Virus record (IMG/VR): IMGVR_UViG_3300027749_002876
Span: 186,001-250,000 of that record
Length of the DNA stretch: 64,000 nucleotides
Strand: one strand, 5' to 3'
The stretch's first letter is position 1; the number at the start of each line of letters is the position of its first letter. Below, piece after piece: positions 29,305-34,583 of this stretch. A program made the position numbers and the translations under genes. Under the pieces are notes generated by a model that saw nothing but the letters and a program-made list of their open reading frames with translations, was not told where the DNA came from and did no database searches.

Positions 29305-29432
29305 TTTATTTTTCCTTTATGTAAAATTATGAGGTTTACTACCTTTTTGCATACTATTATTTATCTAATATCTTTAAAAAAACATAACTACTATGCTGTT
29401 TTGTGCCTTCGAAGGTTCCTGATAAATATATC

Positions 29433-29780
29433 ATGCTTAGACCTATATGCAAAACATGCGGAAAGAATCACTGTGCTGTGAATTATATCCGTGAGGGTAT
29501 TACACACTATCGCAGTGGATGTGATGAATGTGGACGTAAGAAAAAGAAGTTAAAGCCTAGAAAGGCTAACTGGACTAAGAGTGGTTATAAGAAAAAAGCC
29601 ACATGTGATTTGTGTGGCTTTAAGAGTTTGTTTCCTGCGCAAATGACAGTATATCACATTGACGGTAATTTAGAGAATATTGCTCTTACTAATTTACGAA
29701 CTGTTTGCTTATGCTGTATTGAGGTTGTTAAACGCAAGGAAGTAACTTGGCGTCGAGGTGATTTACAGGTTGACCACTGA
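29433..29780 (+). CDS. Cys-rich zinc-binding HNH-like protein (start revised to MLRPICK)
   Basis: three CxxC pairs plus YHIDGN...NLRTVCLCC; GATAAATA at 29421-29428. Confidence 0.7.
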   Translation: MLRPICKTCGKNHCAVNYIREGITHYRSGCDECGRKKKKLKPRKANWTKSGYKKKATCDLCGFKSLFPAQMTVYHIDGNLENIALTNLRTVCLCCIEVVKRKEVTWRRGDLQVDH

Positions 29781-30404
29781 GTTGACTTGTTTATGCAGTT
29801 CATCTATTGAACCATTGTTGTCGATATAATAATCATATAACAATCCTACACTACTATACTCACTAGCATGAACACTATAGTTACCTAATTCTACCATAGC
29901 TTTTAGTCTTTGTTCGCTACCTTCAGGTTCATTGTTATAGTCTACTGCCGAACTATACCAAACTGGACGTTCACCCCTGCTTACACGCATTGTAATGCCG
30001 CCTACACTTTTAATAGAATTAACTTCATTAACAAAACGACAATCTGTAATAACAATGTTTTCATCAGTCTGGCGTAACTTATTCTCTACACTTGCTACCC
30101 AAATATCAGTATGAAAGTTATTACGACACACTTCTGTTCCCCAGTATTGTAATACCCATCTTGGAGTAATATTCATACCCAATCGTTCACTCCACCATTC
30201 ATCACGTTGTTCGCGCCAAGCTCTACTGGTTTTAGTTGAACCCTCTAGATATTCTCTATTCCAACCAAAGACGGCTGCTACAGCGTCTTTTAAACTTGCC
30301 GCAAAACTAACACGCTTGAACCCGTGAAATGTGCAAAGATAGTCAGCAATCGTATCTTTCCCGCTCGAAATTAGCCCGGTTACACCAATAATTTTATTTT
30401 TCAT
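29763..30404 (-). CDS. deoxynucleoside monophosphate kinase (gp1-like)
   Basis: GLISSGKDT P-loop, SFAASLKD, PRWVLQYWGTE, TDCRF.NE, HASE. Confidence 0.9.
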   Translation of the reverse strand: MKNKIIGVTGLISSGKDTIADYLCTFHGFKRVSFAASLKDAVAAVFGWNREYLEGSTKTSRAWREQRDEWWSERLGMNITPRWVLQYWGTEVCRNNFHTDIWVASVENKLRQTDENIVITDCRFVNEVNSIKSVGGITMRVSRGERPVWYSSAVDYNNEPEGSEQRLKAMVELGNYSVHASEYSSVGLLYDYYIDNNGSIDELHKQVNSVVNL

Positions 30405-30410
30405 AAACTA

Positions 30411-30439
30411 AGTTTATCACATACTAATAGTAAAGTCAA
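30411..30439 (-). promoter_or_regulatory. sigma70-type promoter TTGACT-N17-TAAACT, 6 nt before ATG
   Basis: motif and spacing; no SD. Confidence 0.65.
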
Positions 30440-31272
30440 TTAGTATTTGCCCTATTATAATCCTCAAACAATTCTTCTATTGTTTTGTGACACTTAGCAC
30501 CCTTACTTGAATTTTCTATTTTTGGAATTAATCTTAGATTAGTCCAATGACCAATAACTTCTACAGAGATATTATTTTTGAATCCCTCGCTGATACTATA
30601 AATGTGGTCTAAATGTAATTGATTACTTCTTTCTAATTTATTTGGATTGATATCATAAAAATGTTCATACCAGTTTTTATTAGTAATCAATTTGACAGCG
30701 TTGTAATATTCTTCTACTAGAGTTCTATCTTTGGGATTGAGTGATTGCCATTCTTTGTTTCTATCTGAAAGTTTTTGTTTGATAGTAGGATGTTTGGATG
30801 GATTATCAACTCCGTACTTTTCCATCCAAGTTTTTCTTGCCGCCGCAAGGCTGGCTTTGTAGTCTCTATTGCGTTCATTCCATGGTTTATGATTACCTTC
30901 AATAAATCCAATTGAGAATTTTTTATTTGCTTGCATAGACTTATCGGGATCTTTTTGCCTCCAGTGATTCCCGGTAGTTGCTTTACTAACTATTTCTCCT
31001 ATTGCAGTATTTTTTATAGCTACAGATGAAAATTTGCGATAGGCTTTTTCATTCCATCTTAGAGGTTTTGCAGTAATCGGGCACACCTCAATAGAATATC
31101 GTTCGTTAAGTATATGCCATACTCGTTGTTTTGGTTTAGCATTAGGTGGTAGGAACGATGTAGCCTCTAAAATGTCAGACCATAATTCAGGGTGGGTTTT
31201 ACTCAAATATCTGGTTACAGATTTATTACAACTTGTATCTTCAGCAATAATGGTTGCAAGTATGTTTCTCAT
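30436..31272 (-). mobile_element. free-standing HNH homing endonuclease gene
   Basis: C-terminal HLDHIYS...IGHWTNLRLIPKIENSSKG; EKYGVDNPSK repeat-type motif; lies between gp13 and dNMP kinase. Confidence 0.8.
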
Positions 31273-31310: not shown

Positions 31311-32108
31311 TTAACCGGTGACCCAGGTCAGGGGTTGCGAATAGTCCACATATCGTTTCAACTCATCAATAAGTTGTTCCATTGCGGCTTTGCCTTCAGC
31401 TTTCATGGCTGTGCCGTTTAATGTTGTACCACCACCTGGGCCTGCAATAGTTCCAAACTTCTCACGTGCTTCACCAATGGTCAGTTTAAGATTAGCTAAT
31501 ATAAAGTCACCAATCCATACACCAGCACCCGGGTCTTGTAGTAATACTTCTTCTGGTCTTTGAACGTCTGCCCAAATAAGAACACGCTCACCACTACCTT
31601 TTGGATCACGCACAATACGTATAACTTTTGTTACTGGATCAAATGTGTAGATTACATATCCACCAAACATACGTGCGGCTAGTTCAACATAACCAGCATA
31701 GAAGTCATATGTTGCCATACCACCTGCATAGTTATAGTTGAGTAAATAAGTGTTTAATATAGCACTACTGAATGGATCAAAACTACTAGAACTTGGACCA
31801 GTTTCTAATCCAACTGTTCTGCGATAGATACAACGAACATTGATAAACTCTTGTGGAAGTGTGTAAATATCAACATTTTTTACAATCGTCATTAGTGTGT
31901 ATGATTCTGCCGTAGCATTTTGCGCTCTTTGACGATATACTTTAATTGCGTAGTTATATGCCGCTTCGTAGTGTTGAGGATCTAACTCTAGGTCAATGAT
32001 GCCATCACCCAATCTATAACGTAGATTACTGAATAATGCTTGTTTTAATTCATCCAGTGTTAGTCCAGATGGTGTAGAAAGCGGGTTAGCTGTTGCAGAT
32101 ATAGTCAT
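31311..32108 (-). CDS. gp13: neck protein (gp13-like)
   Basis: RLGDGIIDLELD...GEAREKF..IAGPGGGTTLNG..MKAEG. Confidence 0.85.
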   Translation of the reverse strand: MTISATANPLSTPSGLTLDELKQALFSNLRYRLGDGIIDLELDPQHYEAAYNYAIKVYRQRAQNATAESYTLMTIVKNVDIYTLPQEFINVRCIYRRTVGLETGPSSSSFDPFSSAILNTYLLNYNYAGGMATYDFYAGYVELAARMFGGYVIYTFDPVTKVIRIVRDPKGSGERVLIWADVQRPEEVLLQDPGAGVWIGDFILANLKLTIGEAREKFGTIAGPGGGTTLNGTAMKAEGKAAMEQLIDELKRYVDYSQPLTWVTG

Positions 32109-32110
32109 GG

Positions 32111-32143
32111 TAGTTTCCTGATATTGTATTTATCAGGAAACTA
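32111..32143 (-). promoter_or_regulatory. late promoter (32127-32134) within a perfect 13-bp hairpin that covers the gp13 SD
   Basis: TAGTTTCCTGATA / TATCAGGAAACTA. Confidence 0.8.
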
Positions 32144-32158
32144 TAGTCTTATAACCTA

Positions 32159-33112
32159 TTAGGCGTAACCATACCCTGCGGCGCCTAGATAACTTCTAGC
32201 AGTACCAACTCCTGTGGTATTTGTGGCAACAACACCTGCATTACTTACTAAATTGGTTATTGATGTTGCTGATCCGGTATCTCCATATCCAAATATAGCT
32301 TTATCAGCACCATAAATTGCGGCTGCTAGACCGGTTCTGGCAGTACCAACACCTGTAGTGTCACTGGCAATAGTACCGGTATTACTTACTAGATTAGTTA
32401 TTGCAGTAACTCCAATAGTACCACCATATCCATATCCAAATATAGCTGTATCAGTACCGTAGCCGGTTGCCGCCATATAACCTCTAGCAGTACCAACACA
32501 AGTAGTATTACTAGCAACTACTCCCGTATTGCTTACTAAGTTGATCGTTGACACTTGTGTACCACTGGAATTTTCACCAAATGCAAACATAGCTTTATCT
32601 GTTCCATATCCTACCGCCGCAATTTGATTCCTAGCAGTACCGGAACTCCCTACATCAGTAGCAACTACGCCCGTATTTGACACTAAGTTAGTCATCGATG
32701 CTCGGCTAGAATTATTAATCCATCCAAATCCAAATATAGCTTTATCTGTTCCATAACTTGCGGCTGCTAATCCATTTCTAGCAGTGCCTACACCAGTAGT
32801 ATCTGTAGCAACTACACCAGTATTTGATACTAGATTAGTTACTGCTGTTACAGCCACTGCTGGATAAACTGATCCAACATCACCGTATCCAAATATACCT
32901 TTGTCAGTACCATAAGTAGCGGCGGCTAAACTATTTCTAGCAGTGCCTACACCAGTAGTATCTGTAGCAACTACACCAGTATTTGATACTAGATTGGTCA
33001 TTGATACTAAAGTAGTTGAATAACCATATCCAAATATTGCCTTGCTTGAGGGGGGAGGTTGCTTTGTTACACTTACCCCGGCTCCAAATGAAATTCCTGC
33101 TCCAATATCCAT
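32159..33112 (-). CDS. six-repeat Kelch-like beta-propeller protein, paralog 2
   Basis: 6 x KAIFGYG-[variable]-TNLVSNTGVVATDTTGVGTAR-xx-LAAAGYGTD; own late promoter at 33132-33139 and AAGGA SD. Confidence 0.75.
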   Translation of the reverse strand: MDIGAGISFGAGVSVTKQPPPSSKAIFGYGYSTTLVSMTNLVSNTGVVATDTTGVGTARNSLAAATYGTDKGIFGYGDVGSVYPAVAVTAVTNLVSNTGVVATDTTGVGTARNGLAAASYGTDKAIFGFGWINNSSRASMTNLVSNTGVVATDVGSSGTARNQIAAVGYGTDKAMFAFGENSSGTQVSTINLVSNTGVVASNTTCVGTARGYMAATGYGTDTAIFGYGYGGTIGVTAITNLVSNTGTIASDTTGVGTARTGLAAAIYGADKAIFGYGDTGSATSITNLVSNAGVVATNTTGVGTARSYLGAAGYGYA

Positions 33113-33163
33113 AATATATCTTCCTTTATATTATTTATCAGGAAACTATAGTGTTGTAACCTA

Positions 33164-34108
33164 TTACACGGAACCATAACTTGCGGATGCGAGCCAACCT
33201 CTGGTAGTACCTACACCTGTAGTATCGGTAGCTACAACTCCTGTGTTTGATACTAGGTTGGTCATTGATAACTTAGTATTGGTAACATTTTGACCATATC
33301 CAAATATAGCCTTATCGGTACCATAACCTGCGGCTGCTAATGAATATCTAGCAGTGCCAACACCGGTAGTATCACTAGCAATAGTACCTGTATTACTTAC
33401 TAGATTAGTTATTGCTGTTACATCCCCGGATACTGTACCAAAACCAAATCCAAAAATAGCTTTATCAGTGCCGTAGCCTGCGGCTGCTAATGCATACCTA
33501 CTAGTACCGACACCTATCACATCATTACCAACTACACCTGTATTTGAAACTAGATTGGTGATTGAGTTTGGACCACCACCTGTTCCATATGAAAAAATAG
33601 CTTTATCAGTACCGTATCCTGCGGCTGCTAACGCATATCTAGCAGTGCCAACACCTGTTACATCATTACCAACTACACCTGTATTTGAAACTAGGTTAGT
33701 TAGTGAATAAGTTGTTGCTCCGATTCCATATCCAAATATAGCTTTATCAGTTCCATAGCCTGCGGCTGCTAACGAATATCTAGCAGTGCCAACACCCGTA
33801 GTATCTGTAGCAACTACACCTGCATTTGATACTAGATTGGTCACCGATACTGCCGCAAATGACCCATCTCGCCCAAATCCAAATATAGCTTTATCAGTAC
33901 CATAACCTGCGGCTGCAAGTTGTTGTCTAGCAGTGCCAACACCCGTAGTATCTGTAGCAACTACACCTGTGTTTGATACTAAGTTAGTTATCGAAATTTG
34001 TGTACCGGAATTATTAGTACCATATCCAAAAATTGCTTTATATGAGGGTGGGGGTTGTGGAGTTACACTTACTCCACCGCCAAATGAAATTCCTGCTCCA
34101 ATATCCAT
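33164..34108 (-). CDS. six-repeat Kelch-like beta-propeller protein, paralog 1
   Basis: same six-repeat architecture; own late promoter at 34128-34135. Confidence 0.75.
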   Translation of the reverse strand: MDIGAGISFGGGVSVTPQPPPSYKAIFGYGTNNSGTQISITNLVSNTGVVATDTTGVGTARQQLAAAGYGTDKAIFGFGRDGSFAAVSVTNLVSNAGVVATDTTGVGTARYSLAAAGYGTDKAIFGYGIGATTYSLTNLVSNTGVVGNDVTGVGTARYALAAAGYGTDKAIFSYGTGGGPNSITNLVSNTGVVGNDVIGVGTSRYALAAAGYGTDKAIFGFGFGTVSGDVTAITNLVSNTGTIASDTTGVGTARYSLAAAGYGTDKAIFGYGQNVTNTKLSMTNLVSNTGVVATDTTGVGTTRGWLASASYGSV

Positions 34109-34133
34109 AATATATCTTCCTTTATATTATTTA

Positions 34134-34583
34134 TCAGAGATCGCCCTCTTTTCGATTTTCACTATAAAATGCGTCAAAACTGCCACCGGGATAGCGACTT
34201 TCTAACTTCTTAACATTCTCAGCAATCACTTCATTTGGATCTAAATTCAATGCTCTACAAGCATTAATCCAATACCAAATTACATCTCCTAACTCACGTT
34301 TCATATGATAAACATTCTCATCTGTTAGTGCTTTTCCCTGAAAGAAAATCTTTTTGGGAATCTCAATAAACTCTCCAGACTCTGCGGCTAAACCCAAACA
34401 AGCGGTTAACAATAATGGAATATTAACATCTGGACCATGCTTTGTTAATCCATCATTTAAATCTATTTCACAATTACTATCTAATCGGTCTAGAGTGTCC
34501 ATAAATGTAGTCAAGTCATTACTTGGTTTACTTGTTACAGCCTTTACAAATTCACTATATTTGTTTAAATCAATGTTACTCAT
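34134..34583 (-). CDS. mazG: MazG-like nucleotide pyrophosphohydrolase
   Basis: GLAAESGEFIEIPKK...RELGDVIWY...NVKKLESRY. Confidence 0.9.
   Translation of the reverse strand: MSNIDLNKYSEFVKAVTSKPSNDLTTFMDTLDRLDSNCEIDLNDGLTKHGPDVNIPLLLTACLGLAAESGEFIEIPKKIFFQGKALTDENVYHMKRELGDVIWYWINACRALNLDPNEVIAENVKKLESRYPGGSFDAFYSENRKEGDL

What the first reader, a model, noticed from the sequence alone, without database searches (positions are those of the whole stretch)
32127..34137. Propeller genes form self-contained cassettes joined at the late promoter
Each unit runs CTGATAAATA-ATATAAAGGAAGATATATT-ATG...TAA-TAGGTTA(T/C)AA(G/C)ACTATAGTTTC and is followed by the next CTGATAAATA. The first copy overlaps the mazG stop and the last is the gp13 promoter. 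The non-coding ends are near-identical while the coding loops have diverged. Excising units between these repeats would leave an intact mazG-promoter-gp13 junction. Inference: an expandable array whose copy number varies by recombination.
Basis: partly seen in the sequence, partly recalled or inferred. Interest (0 to 1): 0.65.

Follow-up and report, generated by a model that had tools for sequence, protein, structure and literature searches.

The report
Duplicated late-promoter propeller genes before neck gene
Two tandem, fast-diverging lectin-like beta-propeller genes, each with its own copy of the phage's late promoter, sit in a recurrently rearranged gap between mazG and the neck gene of a 525-kb freshwater phage; the repeats mark an old duplication, and I found no sign of an actively shuffling array.

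Summary
CTGATAAATA occurs at 34137, 33141 and 32136. Each of the first two copies heads a 996/1005-nt unit holding a 314/317-aa ORF. The units match at 59 of their first 60 nt and 22 of 24 nt after the stop, but at only 72% overall.

- **The proteins.** They model as six-bladed Kelch-like propellers, distantly related to Photorhabdus PLL lectins. Conserved blades carry hypervariable loops. The complete 524,565-bp genome has 17 paralogs.
- **The motif.** GATAAATA is a late-type promoter motif: 20 copies against 5.7 expected, upstream of sheath, tube and neck genes. At gp13 it lies inside a covarying 13-bp hairpin that pairs the Shine-Dalgarno sequence, as in T4 gene e.
- **Relatives.** The mazG-gp13 gap holds 0 (most), 1 or 2 propeller units, or unrelated ORFs. 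This needs at least 5 gains or losses on the gp13 tree.
- **Origin of the pair.** The A|B joint is the chimera expected from unequal recombination across the promoter repeat. A and B share a derived UTR and a rare blade-5 signature, so they are in-lineage duplicates.
- **Against an active array.**
  - No relative or metagenome contig carries the predicted excision joint.
  - That excision would cut the gp13 hairpin from -17.8 to -7.3 kcal/mol.
  - The pair is old (38% four-fold-site divergence).
  - The pair is identical in every assembly record of this phage.

The parts
34134..34583 (-). mazG-like pyrophosphatase gene. Its TGA stop lies inside the first CTGATAAATA.
   Evidence: Pfam PF03819 E 4.7e-9; phrog_229 E 6e-45. 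The allele is mosaic among relatives.
34128..34137 (-). Promoter copy 1: CTGATAAATA, containing the late-type GATAAATA core and overlapping the mazG stop.
34109..34127 (-). Leader of unit A (ATATAAAGGAAGATATATT) with the Shine-Dalgarno AAGGA. It is identical to the leader of unit B.
   Evidence: Relatives carry the variant TGTTAAAGGATAACATATT.
33164..34108 (-). Propeller gene A, 314 aa: six-bladed Kelch-like / PLL-like beta-propeller.
   Evidence: AF2 pLDDT 88.8, pTM 0.83. Foldseek KLHL12 kelch domain TM 0.77/0.85. Profile hits to PLL2 and PHL lectins. More than 2400 homologues.
33142..33163 (-). 3' flank of unit A (TAGGTTACAACACTATAGTTTC). It duplicates the spacer and 5' arm of the gp13 hairpin.
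33132..33141 (-). Promoter copy 2 (CTGATAAATA) at the chimeric A|B joint.
   Evidence: This joint is found only in this phage's own records.
33113..33131 (-). Leader of unit B, identical to the leader of unit A.
32159..33112 (-). Propeller gene B, 317 aa, 70% identical to A. It shares the rare blade-5 signature GTIAS with A.
32137..32158 (-). 3' flank of unit B (TAGGTTATAAGACTATAGTTTC).
32111..32143 (-). gp13 regulatory hairpin with a 13-bp stem: TAGTTTCCTGATA / TATCAGGAAACTA. GATAAATA (promoter copy 3, 32127-32136) lies in the 5' arm and loop. The Shine-Dalgarno AGGAAAC lies in the 3' arm.
   Evidence: -16.5 kcal/mol, z -5.5. 10 consensus pairs, 6 with compensatory changes, across 46 distinct relatives.
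31311..32108 (-). gp13-like neck protein (head-tail adaptor Ad2).
   Evidence: phrog_211 E 1.1e-22. 38% identity to jumbo-phage neck proteins of Atu_ph07 and PA5oct.

Best explanation
The window comes from a freshwater phage of about 525 kb with T4-type virion genes.

**The site.** The short gap between mazG and the neck gene gp13 is a recurrent insertion site.

**Acquisition (inferred).** An ancestor acquired one late-expressed gene there. The gene encodes a six-bladed, lectin-like (PLL/Kelch-type) beta-propeller and brought its own late-type promoter (TGATAAATA) and Shine-Dalgarno leader. The promoter's TGA became the mazG stop codon. The original spacer and the promoter-bearing hairpin of gp13 were left downstream of the insert.

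**Duplication (shown by junction anatomy and shared derived characters).** This arrangement put a 10-nt direct repeat, CTGATAAATA, on both sides of the unit. In this phage's lineage, unequal recombination or slippage across that repeat duplicated the unit once. The result is the chimeric A|B joint.

**Divergence.** The two copies then diverged quickly at the loops between blades, while the blade scaffold stayed conserved. The non-coding ends stayed nearly identical. I infer they are held by function. They carry the late promoter, the ribosome-binding leader and the 5' arm of the gp13 hairpin.

**The gp13 hairpin (inferred by analogy with T4 gene e and I-TevI).** The hairpin probably blocks translation of gp13 from read-through early transcripts. 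Transcripts started at the internal late promoter would lack the 5' arm and be translated.

**Copy-number differences among relatives (inferred).** The states of 0, 1 and 2 units reflect rare gain, duplication and whole-block exchange between related phages. They do not reflect rapid excision and reintegration.

**Function (inferred).** The propellers are probably late, possibly virion-associated, glycan- or surface-binding modules under diversifying selection.
For: **Anatomy**
- Anatomy and repeats.

**State of the site in relatives**
- 46 loci are empty, with a 37-51-nt gap.
- One unit is present, with conserved flanks TGATAAATATGTTAAAGGATAACATATT-ATG ... TAATAGGTTACAA(C/G)ACTATAGTTTCCTGATAAATAC, in L011, L084, L144, L020, L195, L196 and L202 (and probably L198, whose contig ends inside the unit).
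- Two units are present in this phage and in L106.
- Unrelated ORFs sit there in 17 loci.
- At least 5 changes of state are needed on the gp13 tree.

**In-lineage duplication**
- The A|B joint equals the 3' flank, then CTGATAAATA, then the unit leader.
- A and B alone share the derived leader AATAATATAAAGGAAGATATATT.
- A and B both carry GTIAS in blade 5. Outside this phage's own records it was seen once in the 120 listed homologues (P0028) and once each in L130, L131 and L133, whose context I did not check.

**Age and stability**
- Four-fold-site divergence is 0.38 for A-B, against 0.23-0.26 for gp13 between this phage and its nearest relatives.
- The pair is identical (100%) in this phage's other assembly records.

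**Conserved scaffold, variable loops**
-.

**Promoter motif**
- GATAAATA occurs 20 times against 5.7 expected, with 0 of 100 shuffles reaching 20.
- It sits 4-60 nt upstream of tail sheath, tail tube, neck and virion-protein genes.

**Hairpin**
-. The T4 precedent is in PMC3014915.

**Fold and family**
-.
- Fusions of homologues to Mtd_N, Laminin_G_3 and cadherin domains.
Against: - The protein tree of units and paralogs is star-like and does not recover A and B as sisters. A is as close to the units of other phages (72-74%) as to B (70%). Sisterhood therefore rests on three shared derived characters, which gene conversion could also produce.
- A-B four-fold divergence (0.38) is somewhat higher than flank divergence to the one-unit relatives (0.23-0.32). 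A duplication after that split fits only if the propellers also accumulate silent changes faster.
- No transcript, protein or binding data exist. The promoter timing, the hairpin's function and the lectin activity are all inferred.
Confidence: 0.6

Rival explanations
1. The units are self-contained mobile cassettes in an actively expandable array. Recombination between the promoter repeats frequently excises units (perhaps as circles) and reinserts them, as with PeSL cassettes of T4-type phages. Copy number would then vary within populations.
For: - Direct repeats flank every unit.
- The site holds 0, 1 or 2 units among relatives, with at least 5 changes on the gp13 tree.
- In L108 a propeller gene is flanked on both sides by full hairpin-promoters.
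- The single unit of L011 groups with a paralog from another locus of this genome, G001_453154, with support 96/91.
- PeSL precedent: PMC2839356 and PMC4122927.
Against: - The predicted excision joint (mazG-TGA fused to TAAATAC and the hairpin 3' arm) is absent from all 46 empty relatives and from the whole of IMG/VR and the JGI metagenome contigs.
- Excision would cut hairpin stability from -17.8 to -7.3 kcal/mol.
- The A|B joint occurs only in this phage.
- There are never more than two units here, and the unit's 3' flank occurs once per contig elsewhere.
- The shared homology is 10 nt, and the 10-mer occurs 9 times in 524 kb. PeSLs are about 100 bp and number about 50 per genome.
- A and B are deeply diverged.
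Confidence: 0.2
2. Two independent insertions. B did not arise from A; it came from another propeller locus or another phage and landed next to A. The shared ends would reflect common regulatory signals of the family, or later gene conversion.
For: - The tree is star-like, and A and B are no closer to each other than to other units.
- Different kinds of propeller unit have landed at the same site in relatives. L083 has a unit with its own terminator. L106 has a second unit with no promoter at the joint. L013 has a divergent second gene behind TATAAATA.
Against: - Only A and B share the derived leader, which differs by several substitutions and an indel from the leader conserved in six other lineages.
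- Only A and B share the blade-5 GTIAS signature and 97% DNA identity there.
- A's 3' flank is a copy of B's 3' flank, including the hairpin's 5' arm, as a tandem duplication predicts.
Confidence: 0.12
3. Nuclease-driven turnover. The mazG-gp13-dn213 stretch is a target for free-standing homing-type endonuclease genes. Propeller units are gained, lost or replaced as collateral of double-strand-break repair between co-infecting relatives. The promoter repeats would play no part in the recombination.
For: - A 278-aa ORF just downstream of gp13 (30436-31272) has weak homing-endonuclease similarity (phrog_3339, E 8e-5). It is present in only a few relatives.
- The insert in L135 has a weak NUMOD3 match (E 1.3e-3, below the Pfam cut-off).
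- mazG alleles are mosaic relative to gp13, which shows recombination breakpoints in the region.
Against: - The nuclease assignments are weak.
- Presence of the 278-aa ORF does not track the presence of units. L123 and L125 have the ORF and no unit.
- This model does not explain the exact chimeric A|B joint.
Confidence: 0.08

Closest known systems
PeSL (promoter-early stem-loop) mobile regulatory cassettes of T4-type phages (Arbiol et al. 2010, PMC2839356; Comeau et al. 2014, PMC4122927)
   Same: - A composite promoter and stem-loop element lies at the borders of accessory ORFs that are present or absent between close relatives.
- Recombination between the flanking elements is the proposed source of insertions, deletions and duplications.
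- The inserted gene brings its own promoter.
   Different: - The promoter here is late-type (GATAAATA, no -35 element), not a sigma-70 early promoter.
- The stem-loop pairs the ribosome-binding site and is not a G/C-rich terminator.
- The repeat shared by all three copies is 10 nt, against about 100 bp for PeSLs.
- The 10-mer occurs 9 times in 524 kb, against about 50 PeSLs in 170 kb.
- Empty sites in relatives are not the single chimeric element the PeSL model predicts.
- The site is inside the virion module, not in a hyperplastic region.
T4 gene e (lysozyme) and I-TevI: a late promoter embedded in an RBS-sequestering hairpin (reviewed in PMC3014915)
   Same: - An A/T-rich -10-only late motif lies in the 5' strand and loop of a hairpin.
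- The 3' strand pairs the Shine-Dalgarno sequence just before the start codon.
- Only transcripts started at the internal late promoter should be translatable.
- The gp13 hairpin shows compensatory changes in 46 distinct relatives.
   Different: - The core is GATAAATA, not TATAAATA.
- The gene controlled is the neck gene gp13, in a roughly 525-kb phage only distantly related to T4.
- No transcript mapping exists.
- The hairpin's 5' arm has been copied along with the propeller units.
PLL-family beta-propeller lectins of Photorhabdus (PLL2 6rfz, PHL 5mxe; Pfam PF26607 Beta-prop_PLL) and Kelch propellers
   Same: - All-beta propeller built of repeats of about 47 aa, with a shared GTD(K/N)A(I/L)(F/W) motif in register.
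- The profile of this family hits PLL2 and PHL.
- Atlas neighbours carry PF26607.
- The best structural matches are six-bladed Kelch domains.
   Different: - Six blades, not the seven of PLL and PHL.
- The sequence relation is weak (E 5e-4 to 3e-3).
- No Pfam-A Kelch or other hit.
- Sugar-binding residues were not checked.
- The family is viral, with 17 paralogs in one genome and hypervariable inter-blade loops.
Phage morons (accessory genes inserted between conserved genes with their own promoter)
   Same: An accessory gene with its own promoter sits between two conserved genes and is absent from most relatives.
   Different: Classical morons occur in temperate phages and usually carry their own terminator. 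These units have none and were duplicated together with part of the neighbouring gene's regulatory hairpin.

Membership tests
PeSL mobile regulatory cassettes | Sigma-70-like early promoter (-35 and -10 boxes) | tested here: not met
   The repeated element is CTGATAAATA, with the late-type core GATAAATA and no conserved -35 element. The same core precedes sheath, tube and neck genes.
PeSL mobile regulatory cassettes | Stem-loop joined to or overlapping the promoter | tested here: inconclusive
   Copy 3 lies in a strong 13-bp hairpin (-16.5 kcal/mol, z -5.5). Copy 2 carries only the 5' arm in a weak fold (-5.8 kcal/mol, z -0.5). The fold around copy 1 was not computed.
PeSL mobile regulatory cassettes | Conserved element of about 100 bp repeated tens of times per genome | tested here: not met
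   Only 10 nt are shared by all three copies (29 nt by copies 1 and 2). CTGATAAATA occurs 9 times in the 524,565-bp genome.
PeSL mobile regulatory cassettes | Flanks ORFs that are present or absent between close relatives | tested here: met
   0, 1 or 2 units at the same site in relatives with 86-98% gp13 identity.
PeSL mobile regulatory cassettes | The empty site in relatives is one chimeric element left by recombination between the flanking elements | tested here: not met
   Empty sites keep the mazG stop, about 13 nt and the full hairpin. The predicted joint is absent from IMG/VR and the JGI metagenome contigs.
PeSL mobile regulatory cassettes | Excised mini-circles | not testable with these tools
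PCR or long reads are needed.
T4-type late promoter inside an RBS-sequestering hairpin (gene e / I-TevI type) | -10-only A/T-rich late motif, enriched and placed upstream of virion genes | tested here: met
   GATAAATA occurs 20 times against 5.7 expected. It lies upstream of sheath, tube, neck and virion-protein genes.
T4-type late promoter inside an RBS-sequestering hairpin (gene e / I-TevI type) | Motif in the 5' strand of a hairpin whose 3' strand pairs the Shine-Dalgarno sequence | tested here: met
   TAGTTTCCTGATA-AATACAA-TATCAGGAAACTA, then CC-ATG. 6 of 10 consensus pairs show compensatory changes.
T4-type late promoter inside an RBS-sequestering hairpin (gene e / I-TevI type) | Late transcripts start inside the hairpin; early read-through transcripts are not translated | not testable with these tools
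   No host or RNA data are available.
T4-type late promoter inside an RBS-sequestering hairpin (gene e / I-TevI type) | Phage-encoded late sigma and co-activator (gp55/gp33 type) | not tested
   Not searched for in the 524-kb genome.
PLL-like beta-propeller lectins (PF26607) | Beta-propeller fold built of repeats of about 47 aa | tested here: met
   AF2 pLDDT 88.8, pTM 0.83. Six-bladed Kelch matches with TM 0.77/0.85. Six-fold repeat consensus.
PLL-like beta-propeller lectins (PF26607) | Sequence match to the family | tested here: inconclusive
   The family profile hits PLL2 at E 4.7e-4 and PHL at E 3.1e-3. Atlas neighbour clusters carry PF26607 in 30% of members. PF26607 is not in the local Pfam copy, and there is no Pfam-A hit.
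PLL-like beta-propeller lectins (PF26607) | Seven blades | tested here: not met
   Six repeats and six blades.
PLL-like beta-propeller lectins (PF26607) | Sugar-binding pockets between blades, and sugar binding itself | not tested
   Needs residue-level comparison with the solved complexes and a glycan-binding assay.
Kelch repeat proteins (PF01344) | Match to the Kelch sequence profile | tested here: not met
   No Pfam hit at E <= 0.01. The similarity is of fold only, with 10-16% identity.

The most novel reading that the evidence does not exclude
Late-promoter/RBS-hairpin modules could be the late-gene counterpart of PeSLs. On this reading they act as portable recombination joints through which hypervariable lectin-like propeller genes are inserted, duplicated, swapped and lost next to virion genes. 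That would give populations of huge freshwater phages a rapidly changeable repertoire of surface-binding modules (17 paralogs in this genome). Each new copy would be wired automatically for late-only expression, because it carries the promoter and half of the translational gate with it.
Probability: 0.15. Interest if true: 0.65.

Novelty: new variant of a known kind. Interest (0 to 1): 0.42.

Why it matters
- **A dated example of gene-family growth.** The locus shows how an accessory gene family grows inside the conserved virion module of a huge phage. A gene that carries its own late promoter creates a short direct repeat with the neighbour's promoter, and that repeat then seeds a tandem duplication.
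- **An uncharacterised protein family.** It points to a very large viral family with more than 2,400 detectable homologues and 17 copies in one 525-kb genome. The members are six-bladed, PLL/Kelch-like propellers with rigid blades and hypervariable loops. The family has no match in the Pfam-A copy used here (PF26607 is missing from that copy) and none in PHROGs. Its members are candidate glycan or host-surface binders.
- **A T4-type regulatory device far from T4.** It extends the T4 gene e device, a late promoter inside an RBS-masking hairpin, to the neck gene of a distant group of jumbo phages, with covariation support.
- **Limits.** None of this overturns current ideas. It refines how promoter-linked modular shuffling may operate among late genes.

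Tried and rejected
- **Nucleotide and protein BLAST against cultured-phage records.** The locus and propeller A gave no match. Only gp13 found distant jumbo-phage relatives.
- **Pfam and PHROGs on the propellers.** No hit. PF26607 is not in the local Pfam copy.
- **Protein phylogeny of units and paralogs.** The tree is star-like and uninformative on orthology, so I used shared derived characters and four-fold sites instead.
- **Hairpins in the unit leaders.** The folds are no better than shuffled sequence: z -0.5 for this phage's A|B joint and z -0.7 for L084. I make no claim for them, although the L084-type leader can form a 9-bp stem with the Shine-Dalgarno sequence in the loop.
- **Sequencing runs and read laying.** This was meant to test copy-number heterogeneity.
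- **Search for the predicted excision joint.** No match in viral or metagenome contigs.
- **Search for further promoter-type unit|unit joints.** Only this phage's own records matched.
- **Pfam scan of the unrelated inserts at the site.** The only match was a sub-threshold NUMOD3 in L135.
- **Literature search for this propeller family in jumbo phages.** Nothing relevant.
- **Not done.** The large representative-protein search, complex prediction and alternative genetic codes were not needed.
Full report
**1. What is there**

All genes of the finding are on the minus strand. In order they are:
- a mazG-like pyrophosphatase gene (34583..34134; PF03819, phrog_229);
- propeller gene A (34108..33164, 314 aa);
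- propeller gene B (33112..32159, 317 aa);
- a gp13-like neck gene (32108..31311; phrog_211 head-tail adaptor Ad2, E 1e-22).

CTGATAAATA starts at 34137, 33141 and 32136. The only other copy in the window is at 29419 on the + strand, also just before an ATG. The first copy contains the mazG TGA stop.

Copies 1 and 2 are followed by the identical leader ATATAAAGGAAGATATATT-ATG. Both ORFs end in TAA followed by TAGGTTA(C/T)AA(C/G)ACTATAGTTTC and then the next CTGATAAATA.

The two units (996 and 1005 nt) are identical at 59 of the first 60 nt and at 22 of the 24 nt from the stop on. They are 72% identical overall and 70% identical as proteins.

**2. Where the window comes from**

The window is part of a 91-kb IMG/VR contig. 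The same phage is present as a complete 524,565-bp record, G001, which CheckV rates 100% complete. Its gp13 is about 38% identical to neck proteins of jumbo phages such as Atu_ph07 and PA5oct. It is a huge freshwater phage with T4-type virion genes, not a cyanophage.

**3. The proteins**

Propeller A has more than 2,400 detectable homologues, almost all unnamed, and 380 viral loci.

A 44-sequence alignment shows six repeats of about 47 aa with the consensus SxTNLVSNTGVVATDTTGVGTARxxLAAAGYGTDKAIFGYG. Each repeat is followed by 8-9 positions with no consensus. The blades are rigid and the inter-blade loops are hypervariable.

AlphaFold2 gives an all-beta model (pLDDT 88.8, pTM 0.83). Its best matches are six-bladed Kelch domains (KLHL12, TM 0.77/0.85, 15% identity).

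Pfam-A and PHROGs give no hit. The family profile does hit the Photorhabdus lectins PLL2 (E 4.7e-4) and PHL (E 3.1e-3) in repeat register. Atlas neighbour clusters carry PF26607, Beta-prop_PLL. Some homologues are fused to Mtd_N, Laminin_G_3 or cadherin domains.

The reading that these are late, possibly virion-associated, glycan-binding modules under diversifying selection is an inference.

**4. The repeated motif is a late-type promoter, and at gp13 it sits in a hairpin**

GATAAATA occurs 20 times in the window against 5.7 expected, and none of 100 shuffles reaches 20. It lies almost always on the coding strand, 4-60 nt upstream of an ATG. The genes it precedes include tail sheath, tail tube, neck and other virion proteins.

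At gp13 the motif lies in the 5' arm and loop of a 13-bp hairpin, TAGTTTCCTGATA-AATACAA-TATCAGGAAACTA (32143..32111). The fold is -16.5 kcal/mol with z -5.5. The 3' arm contains the Shine-Dalgarno AGGAAAC, two bases before the ATG.

In 46 distinct relatives the hairpin is kept, and 6 of its 10 consensus pairs show compensatory changes. Examples are TTTCCTG/CAGGAAA, TTACCTG/TAGGTAA and ACTCCAG/CTGGAGT.

This is the design documented for T4 gene e and I-TevI. There, early read-through transcripts mask the ribosome-binding site, while transcripts begun at the late promoter inside the 5' strand are translated (PMC3014915). The function of the hairpin in this phage is inferred from that precedent.

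**5.

Eighty gp13-anchored loci and further loci found through the propeller and through the unit's 3' flank were scanned with tblastn. Their junctions were then read.

| State of the mazG-gp13 gap | Loci |
|---|---|
| Empty: 37-51 nt = mazG stop, about 13 nt, full hairpin | 46 |
| One propeller unit | L011, L084, L144/L147, L020, L195, L196, L202; L198 probably (contig ends inside the unit) |
| Two units | this phage; the L106/L103/L105 lineage |
| One unit plus a divergent 325-aa gene behind TATAAATA | L013 |
| A 198-aa ORF plus a propeller flanked by two full hairpin-promoters | L108 |
| Unrelated ORFs (gap 219-907 nt) | 17 |

- L011 has 97% gp13 identity and 92% mazG identity to this phage. 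L084 has 97% gp13 identity.
- The internal joint of the L106 lineage has no promoter.
- The one-unit loci share conserved flanks: TGATAAATATGTTAAAGGATAACATATT-ATG ... TAATAGGTTACAA(C/G)ACTATAGTTTCCTGATAAATAC.
- L083, another close relative, has a propeller with its own terminator at the site.

On a gp13 DNA tree of 73 loci, presence of a propeller needs at least 5 changes. mazG alleles are mosaic relative to gp13: this phage, L011 and L106 share a 149-aa allele although their gp13 genes lie in different clades.

**6. How the two-unit state arose**

In a one-unit genome, CTGATAAATA occurs on both sides of the unit: once at the mazG stop and once in the gp13 hairpin. Unequal recombination or slippage across this 10-nt repeat predicts exactly the A|B joint seen here. 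That joint is the unit's 3' flank with the hairpin's 5' arm, then CTGATAAATA, then the unit leader.

Two further shared derived characters tie A to B.
- **Leader.** Only A and B have the leader AATAATATAAAGGAAGATATATT. Six other lineages keep AATATGTTAAAGGATAACATATT.
- **Blade 5.** Only A and B have GTIAS in blade 5, with 97% DNA identity there. Outside this phage's own records, GTIAS was seen once among the 120 listed homologues and once each in three related loci whose context I did not check.

So A and B are in-lineage duplicates, or at least have exchanged sequence. This holds even though the protein tree is star-like and does not resolve them.

**7. Why this is not shown to be an active array**

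It also occurs nowhere in IMG/VR or the JGI metagenome contigs. Empty sites look ancestral, not excised.
- Excision would remove the hairpin's 5' arm and weaken the fold from -17.8 to -7.3 kcal/mol. The junction would not be functionally intact.
- The promoter-type unit|unit joint exists only in this phage's own records. No locus has three units. The unit's 3' flank occurs once per contig elsewhere.
- A and B differ at 38% of four-fold sites. That equals the A-L011 and A-L084 values and exceeds the gp13 value for this phage against its nearest relatives, 0.23-0.26. Amino-acid divergence is about ten times that of the flanks, which points to fast loop evolution on an old duplication.
- The two-unit structure is 100% identical in this phage's other assembly records.
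- The homology available is only 10 nt, and that 10-mer occurs 9 times in 524 kb.
- The other paralogs of the genome, 17 in all in arrays of 1-4, are ordinary operons. Each has one terminator-plus-GATAAATA promoter in front, conserved promoter-less linkers (TAATCTCACAAACAAAACAAAAGGATAATATATT-ATG) inside, and a terminator behind. Conserved non-coding ends with diverged loops are thus a family-wide property. They are better explained by constraint on expression signals together with diversifying selection than by a dedicated recombination role.

**8. Comparison with known systems**

The nearest concept is PeSL-mediated modular shuffling in T4-type phages (PMC2839356, PMC4122927).
- **Same:** a promoter and stem-loop at the borders of variable ORFs, and recombination between the repeats.
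- **Different:** the promoter class (late, not sigma-70 early), the role of the stem-loop (RBS masking, not termination), the repeat length and copy number, and the form of the empty sites.

Membership is therefore not claimed. The regulatory hairpin matches the T4 gene e / I-TevI design at the sequence, structure and covariation levels. The proteins are a six-bladed viral offshoot near the PLL lectin and Kelch propellers.

**9. Limits**

- There are no transcript or protein data.
- Orthology among units cannot be resolved by trees.
- The late-sigma genes were not searched for.

**Verdict**

This is a lineage-specific, promoter-bounded tandem duplication of a hypervariable lectin-like propeller gene at a recurrent insertion site. 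It is of moderate interest and is a new variant of known kinds.

Noticed in passing
window 30436-31272 (-): A 278-aa ORF lies between gp13 and the next conserved gene (29763-30404). It has weak homing-endonuclease similarity (phrog_3339, E 8e-5). Among about 90 relatives it is present only in L123/L125 and L013. The gp13-to-next-gene gap is itself very variable in length (66 nt to over 2 kb), so it is a second plastic junction.
   Followed up: partly
G001 (524,565-bp record): 269.7-272.6 kb, 276.4-278.3 kb, 287.5-288.5 kb, 357.9-361.7 kb, 452.0-455.3 kb, 512.2-513.1 kb, 518.2-519.1 kb: There are fifteen further propeller paralogs, 17 in all, in arrays of 1-4. These arrays are operons: a terminator plus GATAAATA promoter in front, near-identical promoter-less linkers inside (TAATCTCACAAACAAAACAAAAGGATAATATATT), and a terminator at the end. 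One copy (454912-455283) is a 123-aa remnant.
   Followed up: partly
window 32141-34008: The blades are repeated at the DNA level within and between the two genes: 12 copies of a 137-nt core at 141-159-nt spacing within each gene, 61-84% identical. This suggests recent blade amplification or ongoing conversion between blades.
   Followed up: no
window 34134-34583 (-) and relatives: mazG is mosaic. This phage, L011 and L106 share a 149-aa allele with a 10-aa insertion (86-92% identity). The nearest gp13 relatives (97-98%) carry a 139-aa allele only 74-76% identical.
   Followed up: partly
L135:400-1014, L137:3072-3770, L108:6339-6935, L110:3258-4130, L109:7675-7965, L154:848-1063: Unrelated genes occupy the same mazG-gp13 gap in other relatives.
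- A 204-aa ORF with NUMOD3-like repeats, a possible homing endonuclease (sub-threshold).
- A 198-232-aa family with no annotation.
- A 290-aa ORF.
- A small WFAWYPVK-motif family (63-96 aa).
- A Cys-rich family of 64-71 aa.
   Followed up: partly
window 29358-29428: Back-to-back GATAAATA motifs lie on opposite strands, at 29365 (-) upstream of the tail-sheath gene and at 29421 (+) four bases before a 115-aa ORF. This looks like a divergent late-promoter pair. Several other motifs lie only 4-5 nt before the ATG (7724, 12289, 35833, 54504), which would give nearly leaderless mRNAs.
   Followed up: no
L013:6985-7962: The second gene at the site in L013 is a very divergent 325-aa protein. It has an N-terminal motif like that of the propellers but none of the blade consensus. 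It is preceded by the canonical T4 late motif TATAAATA, not GATAAATA.
   Followed up: no
window 34043-34108 and 33047-33112 (-), N-termini of A and B: A segment of about 22 aa in front of the propeller, MDIGAGISFGxGVSVTxQPPPS, is conserved across paralogs as (I/L)(T/S)FxGG..(T)..PP. It has lower model confidence (pLDDT about 70). It could be a docking or assembly tag.
   Followed up: no
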